Assembly: GCF_000143415.4 (NCBI RefSeq)
Contig: NW_003314265.1
Span: 1,260,446-1,324,445 of the forward strand
DNA: 64,000 nucleotides
Reading direction: 5' to 3'
Source of the DNA: Selaginella moellendorffii
Taxonomy: Eukaryota > Plantae > Lycopodiophyta
Every line of letters begins with the position of its first letter. The stretch's first letter is position 1. The position numbers were made by a program, and so were the translations under genes. This document shows, piece after piece, positions 3,982 through 15,964 of the stretch. The notes below the pieces were generated by a model that saw only the letters and a program-made list of their open reading frames with translations, did not search any database and was not told the origin of the DNA.

Positions 3982-6900
3982 TCATGAAGTTGGAACTAGT
4001 CCGGACGATTCGCAGTTTGTCAAGCTTTGTGGATCCTTCTCCAGGTACATGTTGCTCAGCAACACGTAAGGCGACGAATCGCAGTGGTCAAAGAAGTTTG
4101 ATGCCTTCCGCGCTGCGTTTGTGCCTCTCTCCAAGTCTCCATGGAGCCTACAAGCTCCCAGGAGGACCTTCCAAGTTAGAGGGTCTCCCGCCGGCATCTT
4201 CCTGATCAAATCCTCGGCCTCCCGGAGCCAGCCTGCTCGTCCCAGCAAGTCCACAAGGCAGTTCATGTGATCCGCCGTGGGAGTGACGCCGTGATCTTCC
4301 ACCATGCACGCAAAGTAGTGCATCCCCTGGCCGACGAGGCCGGCGTGGCTGCAGCCGCTGAGAATGCTGGTGAGCGTTACCGAGGTGGGAAGGACGCCTT
4401 GCAACACCATGCCGTAGAAGAGCTCCAGCGCTTCACTGGGGTGGCCAGCGGACGTGTAGATGGTGACCATCGTCGTCCAAGTTACTACGTTGTTCTTCCT
4501 GGTTCTACCACCCGGATCAGGCGTCTGAAGCTCGTCTTCGAAGAGCTTCCTGGCGGTCTCCAGGCAGCCGCACTTCCCGTACATGGCGATGAGTGCGTTG
4601 GCGAGGACCTCTTCCGCCTGGAAGCCCGAGCGGAGGATGCGAGTGTGGAGAGATTTGCCGTGAGCAAGAGCTCCCAGCAGCGCACACGACTCCACCATTC
4701 TCAGCAGGGCCACCTTTCCTGCCTTGACCCCTTCGAAGTCCATGCTCTTGAGGAGCTCTAGTGCCGGAGAAGCCTGCCAGTTTTGGGAGAGAGCCACGAT
4801 GAGAGCGCTCCAGGAGACGGAATCCTTGTTGCACGAGATACCCTTGAAAACGGACTTTGCATCCTCCACACTCCCGCAACGTCCATAAGCAGCTATGAGA
4901 CTGTTCTCTAGTGCGAGGCTGGGAAGAACTCCTGCCTCGGTCAGCCTTGCGTGTGTCTGCTTCACCATCGTGATGTCTCCCACTCCAGCAATGGCGTCCA
5001 GCAGGCCCAGAAAGGTGACTCTGTGCAGCTTTATCCCTTCCAAGTCCATCCTTCGCACTAGTTCAATCGTCTCCAGGCCGTGTCCGTTGGTAGCATAGGC
5101 AGAAACCATGGCATTCCATGCGATAGAGTCCCTTTCCCCATCGGCCATCTTCTCAAAAAAAATCCTCTCGGCTTCCTCTACGTTGCCACACTTGGCGTGC
5201 ATGTTGAGCAGCGCAGTCTCTAGCACGATAGTCGACTCGAATCTGCTGGCCACAGATAGAACATACTCCGGTATGACGATACTTCTCTCGTCTTTGTCCA
5301 CTGCTGCTGCCAGGCTCACGCACGCATCGATCAAGCCCAGCAAAGTGACTTTGTTTGGATGAACGCCTTCTAGATGCATTTGATGAAGCAGCTCCATCGC
5401 CTGGCTAGCCTGCCCGTTGGTTGCGTGAGCTACAATGGAAGAAGTCCACGAAATCACGTTCTTGCACTCCATTCCCGTGAAGACGGCTCTTGAAGCGTCT
5501 ATGTTACCACACTGGCCATACGAGGTGATGAGTGTGTTGCCAATCTCTTGATCTGCCTCCAATCCTTCCGCAAGCAGTCGTAAGTGGAGCTGCTCCACCT
5601 GTTGTAACGTCGAGCACGCGTCGAGCAGAGCAACGTAGCTGAACTTGTTGAGTCTTACGCCCTGGAGGTCCATACTGTGAAGAAGCTGAGCTGCTTGTTC
5701 GGTCTGGCCGTTGTGTGTGTGAGCTACGATGAAAGCGTTCCATAAGCTGGCTAGATCCTTCCCGCAATCCGGGACACTTTTCCGAAACACTTGGTTGGCT
5801 TCTTCTAGATCTCCATGCTTCCCGTACATGATCACAAGCGTGTGCGGGACACCTTTGTCCCGATCGAATCCACATTCGATGATCTTGGAGTGGACCATCC
5901 GCCCCTGTGACAAATCTTTGCAAGCGTCGAGGAGGATGAGTAACGTAGTCGAGTCTGGCTTAACCCCTTCTAGCTGCATCACCTGATAGACTCGAAAAGC
6001 CTCGTTGCTCTGCCCGTTAAACCCGAGAACCCTCACCATTGCGTTCCATGATAACTCGTTCCTAAAGCTCATCCCGTCGAACAATGTCTTGGCTTCGACT
6101 AAGCTTCCACACTTCCCATACATGTTGACGAGCGAAGTGCTGACAGCAACATCTTCATGAAAAGCTGACTGAGCTGCTCGAGCGTGCACTCTCCGGCCTT
6201 GCTCCAGGAGCTCGGAGCAATCACAGGCGTCGAGAACTGCAATGTAGGTGACGGCATCGGCCTCAATGCCTTCAAGGTCCATCTGATGAAACAGCTTGAA
6301 TGCTTCGTCTACGTATCCAGACTGCGAGTATGTCGAAAGCATGAGCGTCCACGAAACCACGTCCCTGACTTCCATGCGATAGAACTCGGCCATGGCATCT
6401 TCCAAACTCCCAGCTTTCACGTAGAGATTCATGACGGCGTTCCTCATTACAGCGTCTACGTGGATCTCACTCTCGATCAATCGCCGGTGGAGAATCCTGG
6501 CTTGTTCTAAGCTCACCACCCCCGTGCACAAGTTGACGAGATTGTTGAAGGTCACGTCGTCGGGTCTGGTCCCATCCAGCGCCATCTCTGTGAAGAGCTT
6601 GAGTGCATCCTCCACGAGCCCGTTCTGCAGATAGGCCGTTATCAAGACGTTCCACGACACCACATTCTTAGAAACAATCTTACCAAAAAGCGACCTTGCT
6701 TCCTCCAGCGCTCCACACTTCCCGTATAAGTTCACCAGCGCGTGCCCGAGAACGTCCTCGGCCTCAAACCCGAGCTCGGTCACGCGCCCGTGCACCACCT
6801 TCCCTTGCTCCAAGTCCCCCAGCTTAGAGCAAGCCTCGAGAAGGCTCACAAAAACCACCCTGTCCGCCTTGACTCCCTCGTGTTCCATCTCCTGGAACAG

Positions 6901-7626
6901 TTTGGCGGCCTCGAGCTCGTACCCGTTGTGAGCATAGGCCGAGAGCATCGCGTTCCAGGCCACCACGTCCCTGTGCTCCATCCGAAAGAACATCTCTTCG
7001 GCGTCGTGTATGCTGCCACATTTCCCATACATGTTGACGATGGCAGTTCCCAGGAAGATATCTCTGTTCAACCCAAGCTCCAAAGACGTCGAGACTCTCT
7101 CGTGGAGCCACCTTGCCTGGGGCAGCATCTCCTTGCGCGAGATCATGTTGAAAATGGTGGAGTAAGTGAAAGCATCGGCCTCTACTCCATCCAGATCCAT
7201 TCTCCTCAGCGCCTCCATGGCTTCCCTGTGATGCCCATTGCGGGCATATGCCGCGATGAGCAGCGTCCACGAGTAGACGTTTGGGGACTCAATGGCATCG
7301 AACGCCGTACGGGAGCCCTCCACGCCGCCGCACCTGCCGTACATCTCCACCAAGAGATTGGAGAGGAAGCGATCGCCGCCGAGCCCGGATCGCAGCACCG
7401 CGGCGTGAACCCGCTCGGCCTCGGCCAGATCTCCGGCGCGCCCGCACTGCCGGATGCGGTTCGCATGATCTTTGATCTCCTGCTCGCCATGAAGATTTCG
7501 ATCCTGCTGCTGCCTACCCTCCCGATGAATCGCTGCGAGGCGCTGGATTTCCAGCAATGCGGCCTCTCCCAGCGATGCGGCGCTACCGTGCTGCAAGGAT
7601 TTCGCCCGCCATGCCCGAATGCTCAT
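3982..7626 (-). CDS. PLS-class pentatricopeptide repeat protein with E domain and no DYW (organellar RNA-editing factor type)
   Basis: Intronless 1214-aa ORF with many LVNMYGKCGSL / DVVSWNAM repeats. Ends with E-domain motifs CLVDLLGRAG, TWKVLLGACRLHGD and PYVLLSNMY. Confidence 0.95.
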   Translation of the reverse strand: MSIRAWRAKSLQHGSAASLGEAALLEIQRLAAIHREGRQQQDRNLHGEQEIKDHANRIRQCGRAGDLAEAERVHAAVLRSGLGGDRFLSNLLVEMYGRCGGVEGSRTAFDAIESPNVYSWTLLIAAYARNGHHREAMEALRRMDLDGVEADAFTYSTIFNMISRKEMLPQARWLHERVSTSLELGLNRDIFLGTAIVNMYGKCGSIHDAEEMFFRMEHRDVVAWNAMLSAYAHNGYELEAAKLFQEMEHEGVKADRVVFVSLLEACSKLGDLEQGKVVHGRVTELGFEAEDVLGHALVNLYGKCGALEEARSLFGKIVSKNVVSWNVLITAYLQNGLVEDALKLFTEMALDGTRPDDVTFNNLVNLCTGVVSLEQARILHRRLIESEIHVDAVMRNAVMNLYVKAGSLEDAMAEFYRMEVRDVVSWTLMLSTYSQSGYVDEAFKLFHQMDLEGIEADAVTYIAVLDACDCSELLEQGRRVHARAAQSAFHEDVAVSTSLVNMYGKCGSLVEAKTLFDGMSFRNELSWNAMVRVLGFNGQSNEAFRVYQVMQLEGVKPDSTTLLILLDACKDLSQGRMVHSKIIECGFDRDKGVPHTLVIMYGKHGDLEEANQVFRKSVPDCGKDLASLWNAFIVAHTHNGQTEQAAQLLHSMDLQGVRLNKFSYVALLDACSTLQQVEQLHLRLLAEGLEADQEIGNTLITSYGQCGNIDASRAVFTGMECKNVISWTSSIVAHATNGQASQAMELLHQMHLEGVHPNKVTLLGLIDACVSLAAAVDKDERSIVIPEYVLSVASRFESTIVLETALLNMHAKCGNVEEAERIFFEKMADGERDSIAWNAMVSAYATNGHGLETIELVRRMDLEGIKLHRVTFLGLLDAIAGVGDITMVKQTHARLTEAGVLPSLALENSLIAAYGRCGSVEDAKSVFKGISCNKDSVSWSALIVALSQNWQASPALELLKSMDFEGVKAGKVALLRMVESCALLGALAHGKSLHTRILRSGFQAEEVLANALIAMYGKCGCLETARKLFEDELQTPDPGGRTRKNNVVTWTTMVTIYTSAGHPSEALELFYGMVLQGVLPTSVTLTSILSGCSHAGLVGQGMHYFACMVEDHGVTPTADHMNCLVDLLGRAGWLREAEDLIRKMPAGDPLTWKVLLGACRLHGDLERGTNAARKASNFFDHCDSSPYVLLSNMYLEKDPQSLTNCESSGLVPTS

Positions 7627-7718
7627 GCCCTAGCCATCATTCCTCTGTTTTTAGGGCTTTTATTTCGTATTAAAGGAAATATAAGCTAAACGCCATATGT
7701 TAACTTCCCGGATTTAAG

Positions 7719-10700
7719 CTAACTTCCTTCTTCTTCCACGAGCATGGATTTGCTTCTTAGTTGCTGTTCTTGCTGTTCATCTTGTTGCGGTTCTTCGTTT
7801 CCACCGCTTTGATCGTCTCTGAGCAACGGAAATCCTCCCTCAAATTCTTCTCCTCTAGCCCGGGCAGCTCGCCTCCTTACTAGAAATCCCCGCACAAGTG
7901 CCTGGACTTTCGTGGTCGCGCCGCGGATATACACGTCTTGGATGCGCTTCTCTCTTTCGATGCGTAAAGTGAGCGGTAGACCCTGTGCATTGTTGAGAAA
8001 CACTCAAGCCACGAGAACCATGAAACGAAAAGGCTTAACTGTGGGTCCGATCTTGTAAAGCGTCAAAGTTTCTAGCAGCTGCTTGAAAGGAATCCCTTTG
8101 TCTGGAACCCGGAAGCTCATGACCTCGAACTCGATCCTCAGGTACCTGAAATGGGAGTAGGAGAGTGAGAAGCTTGAGATGAGAGTTTAGATCACCATTG
8201 AACGGTGGCATTGTAGCGACGTCCCAGAGGAATTCCTAGAGAGTTTACGAAACGCCGTAGCTTGTGCATGCCAATATAACCCGTGGCTCTGCTCAAAGTA
8301 AAGTGAGAAGCCTGATCAACGAAGTAAAATGCTTACTCGGGATCGAAAGGCAATTCAGCCCATAGAGACTTAAACGCGAGAAGGTGCTCCGGCGTCACCA
8401 TTGAATTCTCGTTCACCAATCCAAAAGTGATGGCATCGAGAATCACGGCTACAAACAGGTTCATGAAGATGTGGCTTGCCACCACGATCAAGCAAACGAA
8501 GTATATCACTCCCGCAAAAGGATAACCACAGTCGTTCTTCAGCATGGTGTTGCCATCGGTACATTTTGGAGTACCCAGCATCGCGTCGGCCATAATGCAC
8601 GACCAGTTGTCAAGCGTCGTTACCTGTGAAACAAGCATTAGCTAATCACGAGCAGAACTAAAATGCAAACGAACTTACTTGAAACACGGTAATGAAAGAA
8701 TTCACAAAGGTTTTGAAGTTAACCAGGGGACCAATACAAGCTCCATCCGCAACTTGGCTGAACATCTGGAAACCGATTCCAGCGAACAAGAAGAGGAAAA
8801 TCCCCAGAAGAGCCATGATCTCTCCTATAGTCGGGCAGCATATGAACATCACTCTCATAATGACCCGAGCTCTTGGTACGTGAGGAATGATGCAAAACAC
8901 TCGAGCAATGTAAGCAAACCGGCCAACATAACCCCTGGGTGTTCCCTTCAATCCCATCAATCCCGCCCCTGCTAAGATGGAAATCACAGCCTCTATGTGT
9001 CTTGAATACTCGTATCTGTAAACTCTAAACTGCAAAACCAGCAATAAAACAACGTTTCATGAGAAAGAAAAACAAAACACGCAGCTTTATACCTCGTCGC
9101 CGAGAAACTTGGTCAATGACTCGACCAAAAAGTACGCAGTGAGCGCGCAATGAGCTTTCTGGCGGCGATTGGATACATACGCTGGTTGGCCGGCATAGTT
9201 CGTAGCCAAGAGTCCAGAGTAACCAAGGAGGCAAACAATCATAGTGTTCTGGTAATGCCGGTTCCGGATCGCATAGAAGCACAGCTTTCTGATATAGTTC
9301 TTCGGTGGTCGTGGCAGTGCCCCTGGTTTTAGCTTCTGAATAATACGGTTCATGTCCCGCCATAGCTTCTGCCTCTCCGTCAAGAGCAGCGACCCAGAAT
9401 TCTTTCCAAACTCGTTTATAAAAACTCCGATGAACACCCTGATGATAAAAAATCCTCCGCAAACGCAGAACGCCACGAAGTACAAGGCATAAGCCGGGCT
9501 GTTGTCCCGTTGCGGCTGCTTGTTTTCACCAACAATATCCATTACTGGATACAGCCAATTCGTTACCCAATTGTCGAAGGTAGAGCAGACGAATAAAGAG
9601 AGAAAAGCATTACCAATGTCGTCAAAGTGGAAGTTCGGATTTACCCAGGCCCGCGGAGAGTAAACGCCAACATTGTTGTAGTAGTGCCCGGTGCAATAGG
9701 CTCGATGAGATATTTTGCTGTCGTTGCAAAAGTAGAGACGACCTCGAAAGAGCTGGATCCCGATGGAGCCGAAAGTCACGAAGAGCATAAATGTGAATAG
9801 CAGCACAGCTATGATGGCAGGAAGCGTCTTGACCAGGTTGGACATTAAGGAGCGCAGTCCACTGATCCTACTGATGAAGCGGAATGGCCGCAATGCCGTC
9901 AAGGCATGAACAGCTCTTCTGGATTTCTCACCCCAGGTGGCAAGGTTGACCGCGTCGATGATAACAATGAAAATATCGAGGATGTTGTAGGGGTCGTTTA
10001 GAACGGCATCCGGCGAGAACATAAAACCGTTGGCTATAACCTTGAGCAGCAGTTCCAGCATGAAAACCTGCAACTCGAGTCATAAGCAATGAAGACATAT
10101 AGCTTGACTCTTACCACAAACACAAGCTTGTGCAGCACGTTGATAGCAGTGGGTGCAAATACCGGCTCCCCAGTTGCCCGCATCTCGATGACAATCCACG
10201 TACCTATGCCAACCCAAGCTATAGAAAACCATTCCCACCACTTGCTCTCGACGATAGCTTTGCAATGCTTTCTCAGGTGACTCTTCTCTCCGAACAAGAG
10301 AAGAGAGCCTTCGTGCAGGTACCATGGCCTTTCGATGCTGTCGATGTTCTTTTCAAGCTGTTCATAGTCCGATAACTGGAACGACTGCCTTTTGCCCGAG
10401 CCTTTTCTGCTCATGTCTCTGCTAAGAAGCAAGCTGGGAGATTTGAAGGACGGAGGCTTAGTGATGTCGGCAAGAGTTAACACAGCATCCTCAAGTGCAG
10501 TTCTCGACCCTCGCTTCTCTCCGATGTTAGGGGGAAATCCAGAAGCTTGCAAAATCTGAGAATTCCGGCTGCGTCGTCTTTGCGGCTCAGTCGAGCTGGC
10601 ACTGGTTTGCTCTGCAGCTGCAGTAGACACTGCCTCCAGATTATCCTGTCCTTTGCCAGAGTCCCGGTCCTTGCGTCGAGAACGATGTTTTTGCTTCTTG

Positions 10701-13700
10701 CTTTGCGTTTTCACAGGTCTAACGTTCATGCTTAGAACTCGATACGCAAGATTTCCAAGACCTGTTTTCATTCCTTCGACCGCACCAACAACCCAGCTTC
10801 CACTTCTCGTGAAAACTCTGCTTTGCATGCGCCTGATCAACCTCATGTGCTCTGTCTGCAGGAAAATGTCATAGAATACGTCTTTGTCAAGAGCTTAAGC
10901 CGACGTACCCTTTGTATTTGCTTCTTCTGGTTGTCTGTAAGCTCGTTTTTCTCCAGTAGAACAGCAATGATGAGGTTCATAATAATATGGACTGTTAAAA
11001 CGAAGTAAAAAACGTAAAGAAAGGGCGCCACTCCGCTGCACATAAACAACACTCATAAGAATTTGACTACAAGGGATCAACGCAACGTACTTATATAGCA
11101 CCCCGGGTCGCATGGAGTTCCACATTTGATTCGGCCAGCCTTCAGCGGTAGTTACCGAGAACCACAGAAGCATAGTCTGGAGCATAGAATCGTGGTGTGC
11201 ACGAGGATAGCCATCCGCAAACGTATAATACTGACCACTAAACAGTTCCATGCTTATGATAGACATTATAACTATAACAAGCACATAGAAAAAGAATACG
11301 CCAACCAGTGAGCCAACAGCACTTATGCAAGTGGCCTAGAACGTCACAAAAAACAGTCAAATGCACACCGCAGGTCAGAAAACTCACCACAACTGAAGGA
11401 TGCTTGTCAACGTATTTCTTTGACAGGTAGAACCATCGCATAATTCGAAACGCGCTGATATTTGGATACGCTCGTGAAACCAGAGCTCCAGCAGAGACCG
11501 CTACAACAACCAGATCTACCATGTTCATCTCTGCAACCACAATCAAGATCAAACTCTGAGGCACGGAGAATGTGAGCTTCACGTACTGTCCTCGTAAAAT
11601 GTGGGCGGGCCGTAAGCAAGAAATCGCAGTAGCAACTCGGCGGCAAAAGTGACAAGAAGCACAGCTTGAATGCCATCTAAAGTTGTCAAGTTAAGGGCCA
11701 GCAAAGTGAAAAGCAAGAACCAAACAGCAATGTGGATACAGACTGTATAGAAGAGATCCTTCGACATGCCATACCTGTACAAACATAAAACAACCGCGTT
11801 AACTGTAACAGCCAACAGCACCCCCCAGTCAAAACTTGGGTGTTGTACGATGGCACGAGATTGTTCAGAGATAGATGCGGCTGCTCTAACTCCCATCGTT
11901 ACGCTTCGACTTAACGACCGGTTATATCGTTCTGAGCCTATCCGGCTCATACGGAACGAAGTAGCATGAAAAGCATCTCTCATAGATGACTGAGTACGAC
12001 TTAAAGCTCGGAAGACACTCCTTTTGACTTTCTTGGATCTGTTCAGAATACGTAAATGCCACTTCATATTCGCTTCGTCTTTTATAATATCGTCCTTGAG
12101 TATATCAGCCATCACCGTTGCATTGTAAAAGGAAGTCTGGTTTTTACGAGATTTTTTCAAAAGCGCCTATACGAAGACGAATTAGAAAGACATAAACAAT
12201 ACAAAAGAACCATGCCTGATGTTCTGCCCTGACCCGAAGGAAAACGCCACTTATTCCCGCAATGAACACGTTGCAAAGAAAATACGTGCCAATGACTACT
12301 AAGGTCATAAAATATGAATCTGCATTGCAAGTATTAGCATAGCTAAACCCAGCAAGTCGAAGACATTACTAGCTCGTTCTCCTTCGGCATCCTTCACGCG
12401 GTACATAATGAGGCTCCATCCCTCCAAGGATACGATCTGAAAATGTTTACTGTAAGTAAATCATTTACTTTGGAATACCAACTGATAATTCCTTTCTCCA
12501 TAAATAGAAACAAACCTGAAACATAGTAAGTAGAGACCACCAGAGGTAATCAAAACTTGTACATCCAAAGTTAGGATTTCCATATACCTGTAAAGACAAC
12601 GTTATAAGTGACAGCTTGGGAGCATTGCAAACCTCACCTTACACTTCTGATTAGAAGGGCAGATGTATCCATCAATGACCTTCTTGTCACAGAAGCGTTC
12701 TGGATATGATAGACGTAAATCGGTTGTCCGCAAGCACCTACAAGACAGCTTTCGCGAAATGGACTTCATCAAAACTCTTATACCTTTGAGACATAGTTTT
12801 TTGCAAAAACTGAGTCCCAAGTAGCGCGTAAAAGACCAGCATAAAGAATGTCAGCAGTATGACATTTTGAAGCGGGCCAACACTCCTCTTAACGGCTGCC
12901 ATGATAGACTGTAAAGAACAAGAAAAAAACACAATTGCTAGCTATTACATCATCGATGAAGCTGACATGTACACAAAACGGCAGCATACAATGACATCCG
13001 CGAAAAAGGTGATATGCTTCAATGCGAGCAGGCCTCGAAATGCACGGAAAACTGCAACTCGTGCAAAGAAGTCCTTTCCAGTTATGCCTCTAACAATGAT
13101 ATGAATCCTGTAACTCGGATAATACTAAAGCATGCTTGTGGAAAGGAAAAGGAAGAGAAGGTGCAAGTACCAGGAGTCGACAACGACGGCAAAATCAAGC
13201 CTGTTATACGGATTCCGAAGGTAGCAGTGGCTTTTCTGGTAAAGCCCCAGACAGCAAATCTTCAAAACCATCTCCAACCTGTAGGAAATCACACAATAAG
13301 GCTAAGACTTTAGTCGCTTAGACGTACGTGTAAAGTGCGGTAATAAACCCGTCCAGAAAATCGAGGTTGAAGTCTCGTACTTCCGTCCACCTTTCACCTC
13401 TGTGCCCGACCTTTACTTGGAAAATCAGCACTATGATATGTGAAAATATGATAAAGCAGAGGAAGTATTCCGCTTTTCTGCAAACAGTGTAAGCAACCAC
13501 CAACAAGAAAACGCGAGCAGTAACGTACTGGCAGTGAAGAAACATGAAGAGATTGAGGCGAACAGAGCTGTAAGGACTCCAAAACCCTAGAGCATGACCC
13601 TCCATCCGAGCTCCAGTGCCTACAGCACTCCTTCTCGCCTTCCTTCTTATGAGCTGAAACAAAGAAATAATAAGAATGGATAAAAGAAAAAAAAAGTTGA

Positions 13701-14050
13701 GCTGATACAAACCAGTATGCGCTTGACTGCCTTGTAAGCCTTCTTCCAATTCTTCCTCGGCAAGGACTCGGGAGCGCGTGGAAGATTCTCGAGCGCAGCT
13801 AGCAAGGCGGCAGTAGATTGCGCTTTGTCATCCTGTGGCTTCCCGACACCATGAATGGGAGGGAGTTGATCTTCCCATCGGGGATTTCGAGCTAGGAAAT
13901 CCGGATCTTCCTCCGGATCTGGTGCACTGCCTCCAAGAACACCAAATCGCTAAGCTACATTCTCTGGGAATGGAAATCTTACCGCTCTGTGAGCTTGGAC
14001 ACGGCCTTGGAGGCGGCCTCAAACACCCCGGCGCTCAAGCGCCTGGCCAT
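7719..14050 (-). CDS. Four-domain (24-TM) voltage-gated-superfamily cation channel alpha subunit (Cav/Nav/NALCN-Cch1 type), many exons
   Basis: ATG 14050 (MARRLSAGVFEAASK). Four pore loops: NPNFGCTSFDYLWWSLLTMFQ|IVSLEGW, WFSVTTAEGW, FHFDDIGNAFLSLFVCSTFDNW and NFKTFVNSFITVFQ|VTTLDNW. S6 motifs include MNLIIAVLL and MNLFVAVILD. EF-hand-like segment EHLLAFKSLWAELPFDPE; IQ motif VQALVRGFLVRRR. Confidence 0.92.
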
Positions 14051-14238
14051 CGCCGCGGCAGCGTTGGACGAGCCCTAGCTCTCAGCTCCAGCTAAAATCT
14101 TTAACGGAAACCCTGATTTCTTTTTTTCAATTAGCAGTTACGCGCCAACCTTTGCCCGCCAAAGCCACGCGTCGCGCACACATTGGGTAATATCTAGAAA
14201 CCCTTATCACACTTTGTCTGATTAGGTTTTGCCCTTCA

Positions 14239-15964
14239 ATGGAGTCCTCTCCCACTGAGCTTTTGGATCTTCCTTCGGACGCTCTATTGCTCTGCGCGGG
14301 GTCGCTCGATCTCAGAGATCTCTCACATTTGGCGATGTCATGCAAGCGCCTTCGACAAATCGCCTACGCCGATCCCCTTTGGGAACGCCAATGCCGGTAA
14401 GCAGCGAATTCTAGCTTATCTTAGACGAATTCTAGCTTATCCTAGCTTTCTTCCATCTAGAATCCGCTGGCCGGCCAAGCAAACTACTTCCGGATTGTTT
14501 GAGTTTGTCGGTGGAAGAGATGATTACCTCGGCAGGCTCATTGCGTGTCAGCAGTTTCGATTCAGGGATCCTTTCGAGTGGCAACTTTCGCTACCGACGA
14601 TGGTCAAGCAGATTTTGATCCACGAAGATGCCATTGTAGCAGCTCGAGTAAGGCGCAACTTTGCACTTAAGTCTTTAAAACCTTTGGTTTCCATTTTTCT
14701 CCTCAGGGCTCGGAAGTTCTAGTTGTAATGCTCAGTTCATCTGGGTTGAAAGTTCTCAATGATCATAGTGCCAGAATTAACTGCATGAGGTGTGTAGTTG
14801 ATCGTCACATTGTTTTTCCTTTCTAGTTTTAATTCTTTGTCATGGCTCAGATTATTTCCTGTAGGTGGACTTCGCAATTACTTCATTGGAGACAACATTT
14901 TAGCTACATGCAGTGCTGATCGTACCATTCGTATATGGGGAAAGGTATCTTTTTTTTTCCTCGATTCTCTTTCCTTGTATCACTTCAAACACACAGGGTC
15001 GAAGCTTGAGAACTCTTAGAGGTCACTCTGATGGGGTCAGCGTTATTGCAGACAGGCTTCTTGGACAAGCAACGGTAATTGCTTCCGGTGGCATGGACAG
15101 CACTGTGAAACTATGGAATTTCAATGGCGGCCGAACACCATTACTAACAACGTTATATGGTCACGAATCATATATTAAAGACTTGGCAGTAGCTGGGTAA
15201 GAATGTTGATACTTAACAATCGTTTCACGATTCTTTTTGTCTTTTGCTTTTCCAGGCACAATCCTTGTATCATGGTTAGTGGAGCCAAAGACTCAAAGGT
15301 GAGCAAAAATATGTGCTCTTTCATGGCTAAATTTGCGTCGCAGCTGCGAGTATGGGACACAAATACGGCAACTTGCGTTGGAGCTGCCAAAGGTCCCGCT
15401 TCCTTGACGAGTCTCAAGTCGTTCCAGTCCATTTGCTACGCTTCAGGAGGCTCTACCGTTGCAGCGCTTGATCTAAGAACGATGAAAACTGTTGCGACGA
15501 TTGATCACCCCGGTGGAATCTGTGCTACTGCGCTATCTTCTTCTGGAAAGCTTCTGTGCACTGGAGGCAACGACAGGTATCAATCAACCGAAATTAATTC
15601 AGAAGTTTGATTTTTCTTTTCAAGGACTTGCAAGCTATGGGACACTAGAAGCAACCATCAGGCTCTCGCAGAACTCTGCGGCCACGACAGCCCCGTGCAC
15701 TTCCTTCACCTTGACGACGTTAAAGTTGTCACTGCAGGCCCCGACGACACTGTGGTAAACGTCTGGGATTCTAACCATGGGACTCTGGTATCAAGCTTCG
15801 ACCAGGGGTCTTGCACGACCGCTCTAGCAAGTCAAGGTCCCAGACTTGCAATCGCAACCTCATCAAGCACCACGCGGCTCCTCTCATACAGAGATTTTTC
15901 GAACTGCACGGAATCCACGGACCAAGCTGCCGGATCAGAGAGCTCAAAGTTTTGGGATATGTGA
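14239..15964 (+). CDS. F-box/WD40-repeat protein, multi-exon
   Basis: Exon 1 MESSPTELLDLPSDALLLCAGSLDLRDLSHLAMSCKRLRQIAYADPLWERQCR is an F-box. WD repeats include LATCSADRTIRIWG, LRGHSDGV...ASGGMDSTVKLWN, LYGHESYI and VTAGPDDTVVNVWD. Confidence 0.9.

What the first reader, a model, noticed from the sequence alone, without database searches (positions are those of the whole stretch)
7719..14050. Apparently complete four-domain Cav/NALCN-type channel with an E-E-D-D filter in a vascular plant
Seen: four homologous 6-TM repeats. The filter residues are E (12422-12424, IVSLEGW), E (11141-11143, TTAEGW), D (9573-9575, STFDNW) and D (8609-8611, TTLDNW). No lesion was noticed in the exons I could assemble. 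Established: flowering plants lack four-domain Cav/Nav channels, green algae have them (Chlamydomonas CAV2 is flagellar), and EEDD is the filter of animal Cav3 T-type channels, so an all-acidic ring implies Ca2+ permeability. Inference: this is a retained channel of a flagellated-sperm lineage and may drive Ca2+ control of sperm motility or chemotaxis. The ORF track splits it into more than 10 fragments, so it is easily mis-annotated.
Basis: partly seen in the sequence, partly recalled or inferred. Interest (0 to 1): 0.9.

Follow-up and report, generated by a model that had tools for sequence, protein, structure and literature searches.

The report
Four-domain cation channel gene in Selaginella
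This spikemoss gene is an intact relative of animal calcium and sodium channels, a type that reviews say land plants lack, and its plant relatives were found only in lineages that still make swimming sperm.

Summary
On the minus strand, 14050-7719, lie 23 exons that encode an uninterrupted 1699-aa protein. The window is Selaginella moellendorffii. The RefSeq models for this locus are truncated and mis-spliced.

The gene looks functional. The other haplotype has the same 23 intact exons, with dN/dS of 0.16. Seven introns are confirmed by RNA. No complete productive mRNA was seen.

In trees it is neither Cav3, Cav1/2, Nav, NALCN/Cch1 nor Chlamydomonas-type CAV2. It belongs to a separate green-lineage clade. 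Prasinophyte algae in that clade have EEDE and embryophytes have EEDD. The named plant members are liverworts, Sphagnum, lycophytes, ferns and Ginkgo. No angiosperm or conifer was found.

Other features are S4 helices with about half the usual charges, no "beacon" aspartate next to the filter, and a conserved EF-hand-like plus IQ tail.

The sperm role fits this distribution but is untested. The link between Cav loss and flagella loss was published in 2016 (Brunet & Arendt). Other first-stage notes of this scan flagged four-domain channels on other pieces of this genome, which are paralogues or the other allele.

The parts
7719..14050 (-). Whole coding span of the four-domain channel gene. ATG at 14050-14048, stop at 7721-7719. 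23 exons, 1699 aa.
   Evidence: Spliced alignments to paralogues P0002 and P0164 and to RefSeq model P0162. Assembled ORF has no stop.
13983..14050 (-). Exon 1 (start codon, N-terminus)
   Evidence: Aligned to the P0002 N-terminus
13713..13926 (-). Exon 2
   Evidence: The junction to exon 3 is seen as contig ends that run on into this exon (table 7).
13529..13653 (-). Exon 3
   Evidence: Intron 3 (13528-13478) is spliced in X1 and X2 contigs and in 2 raw reads of X7.
13328..13477 (-). Exon 4 (DI S1)
   Evidence: Intron 4 (13327-13279) is spliced in X1 and X2.
13171..13278 (-). Exon 5 (DI S2-S3)
12990..13107 (-). Exon 6 (DI S3 end and S4), 118 nt
   Evidence: It is skipped in one X1 contig (joint 12908>13171, out of frame). 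It is present with intron 5 retained in one X2 contig.
12784..12908 (-). Exon 7 (DI S5)
   Evidence: Intron 7 (12783-12738) is spliced in X1.
12638..12737 (-). Exon 8 (DI turret)
12516..12587 (-). Exon 9 (DI pore helix start)
   Evidence: Intron 9 (12515-12437) is spliced in X1.
12370..12436 (-). Exon 10 (DI filter, SLEGW)
   Evidence: Intron 10 (12369-12320) is retained in the one X1 contig that covers it.
12216..12319 (-). Exon 11 (DI S6), followed by the single GC-AG intron (12215-12167)
   Evidence: The GC-AG intron is spliced in an X1 contig (joint 12164>12214, may slide by 4).
11740..12166 (-). Exon 12 (I-II linker, DII S1)
11587..11676 (-). Exon 13 (DII S2). The in-frame 63-nt intron 12 before it (11739-11677) is kept as coding in the RefSeq models.
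   Evidence: Two X7 reads join 11676 to about 11740 and carry the other allele's T558I/V559L.
11388..11530 (-). Exon 14 (DII S3-S4)
11091..11335 (-). Exon 15 (DII S5, pore, filter TAEGW)
10909..11035 (-). Exon 16 (DII S6). Its boundary with exon 17 may slide by 4 nt (10905/10851 is the alternative).
   Evidence: Searches give the two equivalent solutions
10115..10855 (-). Exon 17 (long II-III linker, DIII S1)
9093..10067 (-). Exon 18 (DIII S2 to DIV S2, with filter TFDNW and the III-IV linker)
   Evidence: Pfam Ion_trans 1.8e-38. Cav3.2 1.6e-67.
8679..9029 (-). Exon 19 (DIV S3-S5)
8337..8623 (-). Exon 20 (DIV filter TLDNW, S6, start of C-terminal domain)
8196..8288 (-). Exon 21 (EF-hand-like region), missing from the RefSeq models
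8040..8145 (-). Exon 22
7719..7982 (-). Exon 23 (IQ motif, stop)
   Evidence: Pfam IQ 20.4 bits against a cut-off of 20.3. RefSeq P0162 uses the same exon.
12422..12424 (-). DI filter residue E365
   Evidence: Aligned to the filter E of Cav1 and Cav3.
11141..11143 (-). DII filter residue E702. The next residue is G, where Cav1/2/3 have the 'beacon' D.
9573..9575 (-). DIII filter residue D1173
   Evidence: HMMER aligns it to the D of SKDGW in Cav3.2.
8609..8611 (-). DIV filter residue D1455
13011..13067 (-). DI S4. In-register basic residues are R, R, (L), K.
11412..11459 (-). DII S4. In register are R, R, then Y. The helix is divergent after that.
9852..9920 (-). DIII S4. In register are R, H, T, R, R.
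8865..8924 (-). DIV S4. In register are R, Y, R, C, P.
8222..8395 (-). EF-hand-like post-S6 region. It spans intron 20 and aligns to the matching region of Cav1, Nav2 and Cch1.
   Evidence: 54% identity to the C-terminal domains of Marchantia and Ceratopteris.
7854..7928 (-). IQ motif (VQxxxRGxxxR), aligned to the Cav1 IQ domain

Best explanation
Shown. This is a real, intact, selectively maintained gene of Selaginella moellendorffii. It encodes the pore-forming subunit of a four-domain (24-TM) cation channel of the Cav/Nav superfamily. It belongs to a Viridiplantae-specific subfamily in which prasinophyte algae have EEDE and embryophytes have EEDD. That subfamily was inherited vertically and is distinct from Cav1/2, Cav3, Nav, NALCN/Cch1 and volvocine CAV2.

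Inferred from sequence. The all-acidic E-E-D-D ring should bind and pass divalent cations, so the channel is probably Ca2+-permeable. It lacks the filter+1 aspartate of strictly Ca2+-selective Cavs, so it may also pass monovalent cations. The conserved EF-hand-like plus IQ tail suggests calmodulin/Ca2+ feedback. The voltage-sensor scaffolds keep their S2/S3 counter-charges, but S4 carries only about 10 basic residues in register, against about 20 in Cav3. Gating is therefore probably only weakly voltage dependent, or is driven by another signal.

Inferred from distribution. Its main job is Ca2+ entry in the biflagellate spermatozoid, for control of the flagellar waveform or for chemotaxis. This would be analogous to Chlamydomonas CAV2 and animal CatSper. 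The gene would then have been lost where swimming sperm were lost.
For: Gene structure and intactness.

Allele comparison: the second haplotype (GL377592.1) has the same 23 exons and the same neighbours. There are 34.5 synonymous and 18.5 non-synonymous differences, giving dN/dS 0.157.

Transcription: introns 2, 3, 4, 7, 9, 11 and 12 are spliced in RNA contigs or reads, and both alleles are seen.

Family.

Phylogeny: FastTree with 174 and 77 taxa and IQ-TREE LG+G4 with 49 taxa and 1212 columns. The green clade gets 100, liverworts 100, tracheophytes 91, lycophytes 100. The gene tree is close to the species tree.

Distribution: Marchantia polymorpha Mp2g23520 and Mp6g11570, M. paleacea, two Riccia species, two Sphagnum species, two Diphasiastrum genes, four Selaginella loci, Ceratopteris, Adiantum and Ginkgo. 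After these the next hits are animal Cav1. No angiosperm or conifer appears.

Filter: EEDD in all complete embryophyte sequences except Ceratopteris, which has EDDD.

S4, S2/S3 and tail.

Expression pattern: only 4 runs of one study hold 20-23% of the gene's words, and 13 of the 20 contig-based RNA runs hold none. This fits restricted expression.

Precedents for genes kept only in plants with motile sperm: CAPE (PMC8115329) and BK channels. Cav loss tracks flagella loss across eukaryotes (PMC4685582).
Against: There is no tissue information, because run identities are coded. Sperm expression is therefore untested.

Every multi-exon RNA contig seen also has a defect: exon 6 skipped (frameshift), or intron 5 or intron 10 retained. 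A full productive mRNA has not been shown. Some of the signal could be leaky transcription from the promoter region shared with the F-box/WD40 gene 188 bp away.

Selaginella has four paralogous loci, which is more than one sperm function needs.

The word-indexed protein search is not exhaustive and it filters by length, so the absence from seed plants other than Ginkgo is not proven.

Selectivity and gating are predictions from sequence only. The missing DII aspartate argues against high Ca2+ selectivity.
Confidence: 0.5

Rival explanations
1. This is a functional four-domain channel whose main role is not in sperm. It serves general Ca2+/cation signalling, for example in sporophyte or gametophyte tissues, rhizophores or stress responses. 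On this view it was lost in most seed plants for reasons unrelated to flagella.
For: Transcripts are detectable in several RNA-seq runs of the species. Public Selaginella libraries are mostly sporophytic (my knowledge; the tissues here are coded). Selaginella has four paralogues and Marchantia and Diphasiastrum have two each, which points to diversification.
Against: Every named plant member comes from a flagellate-sperm lineage, including Ginkgo, the only seed plant found. The transcripts seen are rare and partly unproductive. Most RNA runs hold none of the gene's words.
Confidence: 0.3
2. In function it is a voltage-insensitive leak or background cation channel, working like NALCN or Cch1. 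It may pair with a Mid1/NALF-like subunit. On this view it is not a depolarisation-activated Ca2+ channel, whichever cell it works in.
For: S4 charges are roughly halved, and DIV S4 has only two in register plus a proline. There is no beacon aspartate in DII. The III-IV linker motif LLTERQK resembles that of Cch1 and Nav2. Other first-stage notes report Mid1/NALF-like genes in this genome (untested).
Against: The filter has no lysine or asparagine, being EEDD against EEKE/EKEE or NEEE. The tree places it away from Cch1. NALCN is the weakest solved-structure match. The S2/S3 counter-charges of the sensors are conserved in DI-DIII. The linker motif is also present in volvocine CAV2 and in Nav2, so it is not specific to NALCN.
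Confidence: 0.15
3. It is a decaying or unproductive relic. It is transcribed at a low level, but it no longer makes a working channel.
For: The RNA contigs show a skipped exon 6 (frameshift) and retained introns 5 and 10, the latter giving a premature stop. RefSeq could build only truncated models. The voltage sensors have lost charges.
Against: All 23 exons are intact with canonical splice sites in both haplotypes. dN/dS between the alleles is 0.157. Identity to paralogue b is 75%, with conserved TM segments and tail. The charge-poor DI and DII S4 pattern is shared with the algal sister clade, so it is old and not a sign of recent decay.
Confidence: 0.04
4. It is a contaminant or a recent horizontal acquisition from a protist or animal.
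For: RefSeq names the models after animal channels, and reviews say land plants lack the family.
Against: The gene is flanked by a PLS-class PPR gene and an F-box/WD40 gene on both haplotypes. Its introns of 46-81 nt are typical of Selaginella. The gene tree follows plant phylogeny from liverworts to Ginkgo.
Confidence: 0.01

Closest known systems
Animal Cav3 (T-type) channels
   Same: Four-domain architecture. EEDD filter ring. Best solved-structure hit for the DIII exon (Cav3.2).
   Different: It is not in the Cav3 clade. DII filter+1 is G, not the Cav3 aspartate, and DIII filter+1 is N, not G. It has an EF-hand-like plus IQ tail, a stretch where the Cav3 sequences do not align. Its S4 helices carry about half the charges.
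Animal Cav1/Cav2 (HVA) channels
   Same: The C-terminal EF-hand-like region and an IQ motif lie at the homologous position. After plants and algae, Cav1 channels are the next best hits of the Marchantia orthologue.
   Different: The filter is EEDD, not EEEE. There is no DII aspartate. The Pfam GPHH and Ca_chan_IQ models are not reached. It falls in a separate clade.
Chlamydomonas CAV2 (flagellar voltage-dependent Ca2+ channel; Fujiu et al. 2009, cited)
   Same: It is a green-lineage four-domain channel, and the proposed role in flagellar Ca2+ entry is the same.
   Different: The volvocine CAV2 orthologue (Pleodorina, P0182) lies in a different clade and has full S4 charge sets. The plant gene is therefore not a CAV2 orthologue.
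NALCN / fungal Cch1
   Same: Reduced S4 charges. A similar III-IV linker motif and EF-hand-like region.
   Different: The filter is EEDD, against EEKE/EKEE (NALCN) or NEEE (Cch1). It is distant in the tree. NALCN gives the lowest solved-structure scores.
Prasinophyte 'voltage-gated calcium/sodium channel' (Pycnococcus provasolii, Pseudoscourfieldia marina) and related marine metagenome proteins
   Same: It is the sister clade with 100% support. It shares the DI and DII S4 pattern, the III-IV linker and the tail.
   Different: The algal filter is EEDE, and the algal DIV S4 keeps five arginines. Identity is about 30%.
Other genes retained only in plants with motile sperm (CAPE adenylyl cyclase/PDE; BK/Slo K+ channels)
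   Same: They show the same phyletic pattern: bryophytes, lycophytes, ferns and Ginkgo/cycads, absent from angiosperms.
   Different: They are unrelated proteins. For CAPE and MpBK2a, male-organ expression has been shown. For this channel it has not.

Membership tests
Four-domain voltage-gated cation channel superfamily (Cav/Nav/NALCN) | Four homologous 6-TM repeats in one polypeptide | tested here: met
   The 1699-aa model has four repeats, and each matches Cav/Nav repeats. The paralogue aligns over its full length to solved Cav and Nav structures.
Four-domain voltage-gated cation channel superfamily (Cav/Nav/NALCN) | A P-loop with one filter residue per repeat, followed by W two residues on | tested here: met
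   SLEGW, TAEGW, TFDNW and TLDNW align to the filter columns.
Four-domain voltage-gated cation channel superfamily (Cav/Nav/NALCN) | S4 with basic residues at every third position in all four repeats | tested here: inconclusive
   The pattern is present but depleted. DI has 3, DII 2, DIII 3 (plus H) and DIV 2 in register, against about 20 in Cav3. The S2/S3 counter-charges are kept in DI-DIII.
Cav3 (T-type) | EEDD filter | tested here: met
Cav3 (T-type) | Placement inside the Cav3 clade | tested here: not met
   The Cav3 sequences (Anopheles, Gadus, Branchiostoma) form their own clade. The plant clade is separated from it with 100% support.
Cav3 (T-type) | Aspartate at filter+1 of DII ('beacon'; PMC10120453) | tested here: not met
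   The window has G, the paralogues have S and Ginkgo has N.
Cav1/Cav2 (HVA) | EEEE (or EDEE) filter | tested here: not met
   The filter is EEDD.
Cav1/Cav2 (HVA) | C-terminal EF-hand-like region plus IQ domain | tested here: met
   Both align to the Cav1.4 EF-like and IQ regions. Pfam IQ is at threshold. GPHH is below its cut-off.
Cav1/Cav2 (HVA) | AID motif for the beta subunit in the I-II linker | not tested
   I saw no AID-like motif when reading the linker, but I ran no formal search.
NALCN / Cch1 | Filter with K (EEKE/EKEE), or NEEE in Cch1 | tested here: not met
   The filter is EEDD. The Cch1 references have NEEE.
NALCN / Cch1 | Placement with Cch1/NALCN in trees | tested here: not met
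   Cch1 forms a separate clade. No NALCN sequence was in the tree, but NALCN is the weakest solved-structure match.
Chlamydomonas CAV2 orthologue group | Placement with volvocine CAV2 | tested here: not met
   Pleodorina CAV2 groups elsewhere.
Viridiplantae EED(D/E) four-domain clade (defined here) | Monophyly with the prasinophyte and embryophyte sequences, plus the shared DI/DII S4 pattern and LLTERQKLWRD linker | tested here: met
   UFBoot 100 and SH-like 1.00. Alignments.

The most novel reading that the evidence does not exclude
Land plants with swimming sperm kept an ancient green-lineage four-domain channel as their sperm-flagellum Ca2+ entry pathway. It would be a plant counterpart of CatSper and CAV2. 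Its voltage sensors have largely been disarmed, so a chemoattractant-linked signal (cAMP, pH or Ca2+/calmodulin) would open it instead of depolarisation. The gene would have been lost each time flagellate sperm were lost.
Probability: 0.3. Interest if true: 0.8.

Novelty: new member of a known kind. Interest (0 to 1): 0.6.

Why it matters
Reviews up to 2024 state that embryophytes lack four-domain Cav channels (PMC5824947, PMC6509283, PMC11085791). That statement underlies the usual account of how plant Ca2+ signalling differs from that of animals and algae. The evidence here shows a vertically inherited, selectively maintained four-domain channel family from liverworts to Ginkgo. In the searches run, it was found only in lineages with motile sperm.

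This corrects the gene inventory. It also gives a concrete candidate for a Ca2+ channel controlling plant sperm motility or chemotaxis, a role for which the papers I read name only GLR channels and cAMP signalling. The question becomes directly testable in Marchantia (Mp2g23520, Mp6g11570) and Ceratopteris.

The combination of an EEDD ring without the beacon aspartate and half-charged S4 helices is also a natural experiment for ideas about selectivity and gating.

The novelty is limited. The models are already in RefSeq, truncated and auto-named, and the link between flagella and Cav loss, with a moss candidate, was published in 2016.

Tried and rejected
Steps that led nowhere:
- IQ-TREE on 77 taxa exceeded the time limit. 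A background run was killed. I reduced the set to 49 taxa.
- Paralogue P0164 is not on record in the look-up of encoding contigs. So I could not compute dN/dS between paralogues and used the two alleles instead.
- Full-text search for the Marchantia gene identifiers found nothing.
- The supplement of a land-plant expression atlas preprint holds neither the identifiers nor 'calcium channel'.
- Dreyer et al. 2021 (Trends Plant Sci) is not held.
- Papers on plant sperm and on the Cycas genome do not mention such a channel.
- Pfam GPHH stays below its cut-off.
- The first word-indexed protein search with P0001 found only Selaginella. An alignment query and the Marchantia protein reached further.

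Readings considered and rejected:
- Cav3 membership: rejected on the tree, the tail and the missing DII aspartate.
- NALCN/Cch1 membership: rejected on the filter and the tree.
- CAV2 orthology: rejected on the tree.
- A NALCN-specific III-IV linker: rejected because the motif is also in Nav2, CAV2 and Cch1.
- Pseudogene and contaminant: rejected, see the rival explanations.

Not done:
- No structure prediction. The protein exceeds the size limit, and a spliced sequence has no reference.
- No check of the Mid1/NALF-like genes noted elsewhere in this genome.
Full report
WHAT IS THERE. The ORF list for 6500-15500 shows many short minus-strand ORFs with channel-like sequence. Pfam finds Ion_trans in the larger ones and an IQ motif in the last. 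The 328-aa ORF at 9087-10073 matches domain III of solved Cav3.2 (231 bits, E 1.6e-67), Cav3.3 and Cav1.2. Nav channels score lower and NALCN lowest, at 113 bits.

An exhaustive HMMER search with that exon found 6950 relatives. The best are two Selaginella moellendorffii RefSeq proteins and a Ginkgo protein. I wrote a protein-to-genome spliced aligner and ran it with the full-length paralogues P0002 and P0164 and with the RefSeq models.

The result is 23 exons on the minus strand, from the ATG at 14050 to the stop at 7721-7719. The CDS is 5100 nt and encodes 1699 aa with no internal stop. The 22 introns are 46-81 nt, and all are GT-AG except one GC-AG. All four repeats match Cav/Nav repeats.

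WHOSE GENE, AND IS IT ANNOTATED. RefSeq protein P0162 ('voltage-dependent L-type calcium channel subunit alpha-1S-like', S. moellendorffii) is 1140/1142 identical to the window. P0001 ('sodium channel protein type 9 subunit alpha-like') is 1086/1102 identical.

Both models start in the I-II linker and lack domain I. Both keep the in-frame intron 12 as coding and drop exon 21, and their splicing around exons 15-17 differs from the paralogue-guided model. P0001 lies on scaffold GL377592.1 with the same neighbours, an F-box/WD40 gene and a PPR gene, so it is the other haplotype. There the first domain-I exons were called as a separate 174-aa gene.

The flanking genes in the window are a 1214-aa PLS-class PPR gene and a divergent F-box/WD40 gene whose ATG is 188 bp from the channel's ATG. 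With the short introns, this makes contamination very unlikely.

IS IT ALIVE.
(a) The other haplotype has the same 23 exons, of the same lengths and intact.
(b) The alleles differ at 53 of 5097 coding positions, 34.5 synonymous and 18.5 non-synonymous. This gives dS 0.030, dN 0.0047 and dN/dS 0.157, which indicates purifying selection.
(c) RNA was laid on 7719-13718. Introns 3, 4, 7, 9 and 11 (the GC-AG one) are spliced in assembled RNA contigs. Intron 2 is shown by contig ends that run on into exon 2. Intron 12 is shown by two raw reads that carry T558I/V559L, which are the other allele's residues.

There are caveats. One contig skips exon 6 (118 nt, domain I S4, a frameshift). One retains intron 5. 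One retains intron 10, which gives a premature stop. The 3' half is covered only by unspliced fragments. Depth is low. Of the 20 contig-based RNA runs of the species, 4 from one study hold 20-23% of the words, 3 hold 4-6% and 13 hold none.

So transcription and correct use of 7 of the 22 introns are shown, but a complete productive mRNA is not. The tissues are unknown because the runs are coded.

WHICH FAMILY. I aligned 174 full-length relatives and read the filter columns. EEEE occurs in 67, EEDD in 20, and many other combinations occur. EEDD is found in animal Cav3 and, separately, in the plant sequences.

FastTree on 174 and on 77 taxa and IQ-TREE on 49 taxa (LG+G4, 1000 ultrafast bootstraps, 1212 columns) agree. 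The window groups with three other Selaginella loci (support 100), then with Diphasiastrum (lycophytes 100), then with ferns and Ginkgo (tracheophytes 91), then with liverworts (100), then with Sphagnum (85). The whole embryophyte group is sister, at 100, to a clade with an EEDE filter.

Cluster look-ups name the members. They are Marchantia polymorpha Mp2g23520 and Mp6g11570, M. paleacea, Riccia sorocarpa and R. fluitans, Sphagnum troendelagicum and S. tenellum, two Diphasiastrum complanatum genes, Ceratopteris richardii KP509_11G019800, Adiantum nelumboides and Ginkgo Gb_09885. An unnamed UniParc entry groups with Sphagnum.

The EEDE sister clade contains the prasinophytes Pycnococcus provasolii and Pseudoscourfieldia marina, plus marine metagenome proteins.

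The green clade is separated with 100% support from Cav1, Cav3, Nav2, volvocine CAV2 (Pleodorina) and fungal Cch1. The gene is therefore a member of the four-domain superfamily. It is not a Cav3, Cav1/2, NALCN/Cch1 or CAV2 orthologue. The gene tree follows plant phylogeny, which points to vertical descent from the ancestor of land plants.

DISTRIBUTION AND THE SPERM IDEA. Every named plant member comes from a lineage with flagellate sperm. In the search with the Marchantia protein, the plant hits are followed directly by animal Cav1 at about 26% identity. No angiosperm or conifer appears, although such proteomes are abundant in the sources searched.

That search has limits. It uses a word index, and it sees only proteins of 1057-3363 aa. 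It also lists only the best 120 of 290 hits. Absence is therefore likely but not proven.

The pattern matches CAPE (PMC8115329) and BK channels. It also matches the published generalisation that Nav/Cav loss tracks flagella loss, for which Brunet & Arendt 2016 already cited a Physcomitrella candidate and found none in seed plants (PMC4685582). Ginkgo extends that picture.

Other reviews say plainly that land plants lack the family. I found no paper that names or characterises the plant genes.

HOW IT PROBABLY WORKS. Pore: an all-acidic E-E-D-D ring implies divalent binding and probably Ca2+ permeation. [quoted passage not shown] Neutralising it makes Cav3 Na+-permeable. Here filter+1 is G (DI), G (DII), N (DIII) and N (DIV). 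The paralogues have S in DII and Ginkgo has N. So the degree of Ca2+ selectivity is open.

Sensors: the S2 aromatic and acidic residues and the S3 N/D counter-charges are kept in DI-DIII. S4 has in register R,R,L,K (DI), R,R,Y (DII), R,H,T,R,R (DIII) and R,Y,R,C,P (DIV). That is about 10 basic residues, against about 20 in Cav3. The DI and DII pattern is shared with the algal sister clade, so it is ancient. The DIV loss is specific to lycophytes, since the prasinophytes keep five arginines. This confirms the other first-stage note on charge-poor S4 helices (s1-380799). Its 'NALCN-like III-IV linker' is not specific, because the LLTE.QK motif also occurs in Nav2, volvocine CAV2 and Cch1.

Tail: the post-S6 EF-hand-like region and an IQ motif align to those of Cav1. 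The Cav3 sequences do not align across this stretch. IQ is detected by Pfam in the window, in the paralogues (five stretches in paralogue b) and in Marchantia. The tail is the best conserved part between Selaginella and Marchantia or Ceratopteris, at 54% identity against about 35-39% overall.

My reading is a Ca2+-permeable, calmodulin-modulated channel with weak or unconventional voltage dependence. These are inferences from sequence. Nothing here measures function.

VERDICT. The gene is real, complete and under selection, and it belongs to a land-plant-wide family found only in lineages with swimming sperm. The labels 'Cav3-like' and 'NALCN-type' do not hold as family assignments. Ca2+ selectivity is uncertain. 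The sperm function remains a well-motivated hypothesis.

On novelty, it is a new, uncharacterised member clade of a known superfamily. It is present in databases under misleading automatic names and contradicts a common review statement, but it was partly anticipated in 2016.

My confidence that this is an intact functional channel gene of this clade is about 0.9. My confidence that its main role is in sperm is about 0.45.

Noticed in passing
window 3982-7626 (-): A single-exon 1214-aa PLS-class pentatricopeptide repeat gene with a weak E-motif hit and no Pfam hit to a DYW domain. It lies directly downstream of the channel gene and is also present on the other haplotype.
   Followed up: partly
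window 14239-15610 (+): A divergent F-box/WD40 gene whose ATG lies 188 bp from the channel's ATG. The two genes probably share a bidirectional promoter. That could explain low-level, poorly spliced channel transcripts, which are deeper at the 5' end.
   Followed up: partly
window 12909-13170 and 12320-12369: RNA contigs show exon 6 (domain I S4) skipped, which shifts the frame. They also show introns 5 and 10 retained. It is not known whether this is noise at low expression or regulated unproductive splicing.
   Followed up: partly
window 11740-11745; L001 about 6368-6373: Raw RNA reads at the intron-12 junction carry the other haplotype's residues (T558I, V559L). Both alleles of the sequenced heterozygous plant are therefore transcribed.
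   Followed up: yes
L001 4062-4909: On the other haplotype, the first domain-I exons of the channel were called as a separate 174-aa gene with no Pfam hit. This is an annotation artefact.
   Followed up: yes
P0164 residues about 1550-1721 (Selaginella paralogue b): The closest paralogue has five IQ-motif stretches in its tail (Pfam IQ 72.7 bits), against one in the window's gene.
   Followed up: no
other pieces of the same genome (scan notes s1-374919, s1-346922): First-stage notes report Mid1/NALF(FAM155)-like accessory-subunit genes in this genome. If they are real, they could be partners of these four-domain channels, as in Cch1-Mid1 and NALCN-NALF. I did not check this.
   Followed up: no
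Ceratopteris P0171 and Adiantum P0258: The fern orthologues have D instead of E at the DII filter position (EDDD), unlike all other embryophyte members.
   Followed up: no
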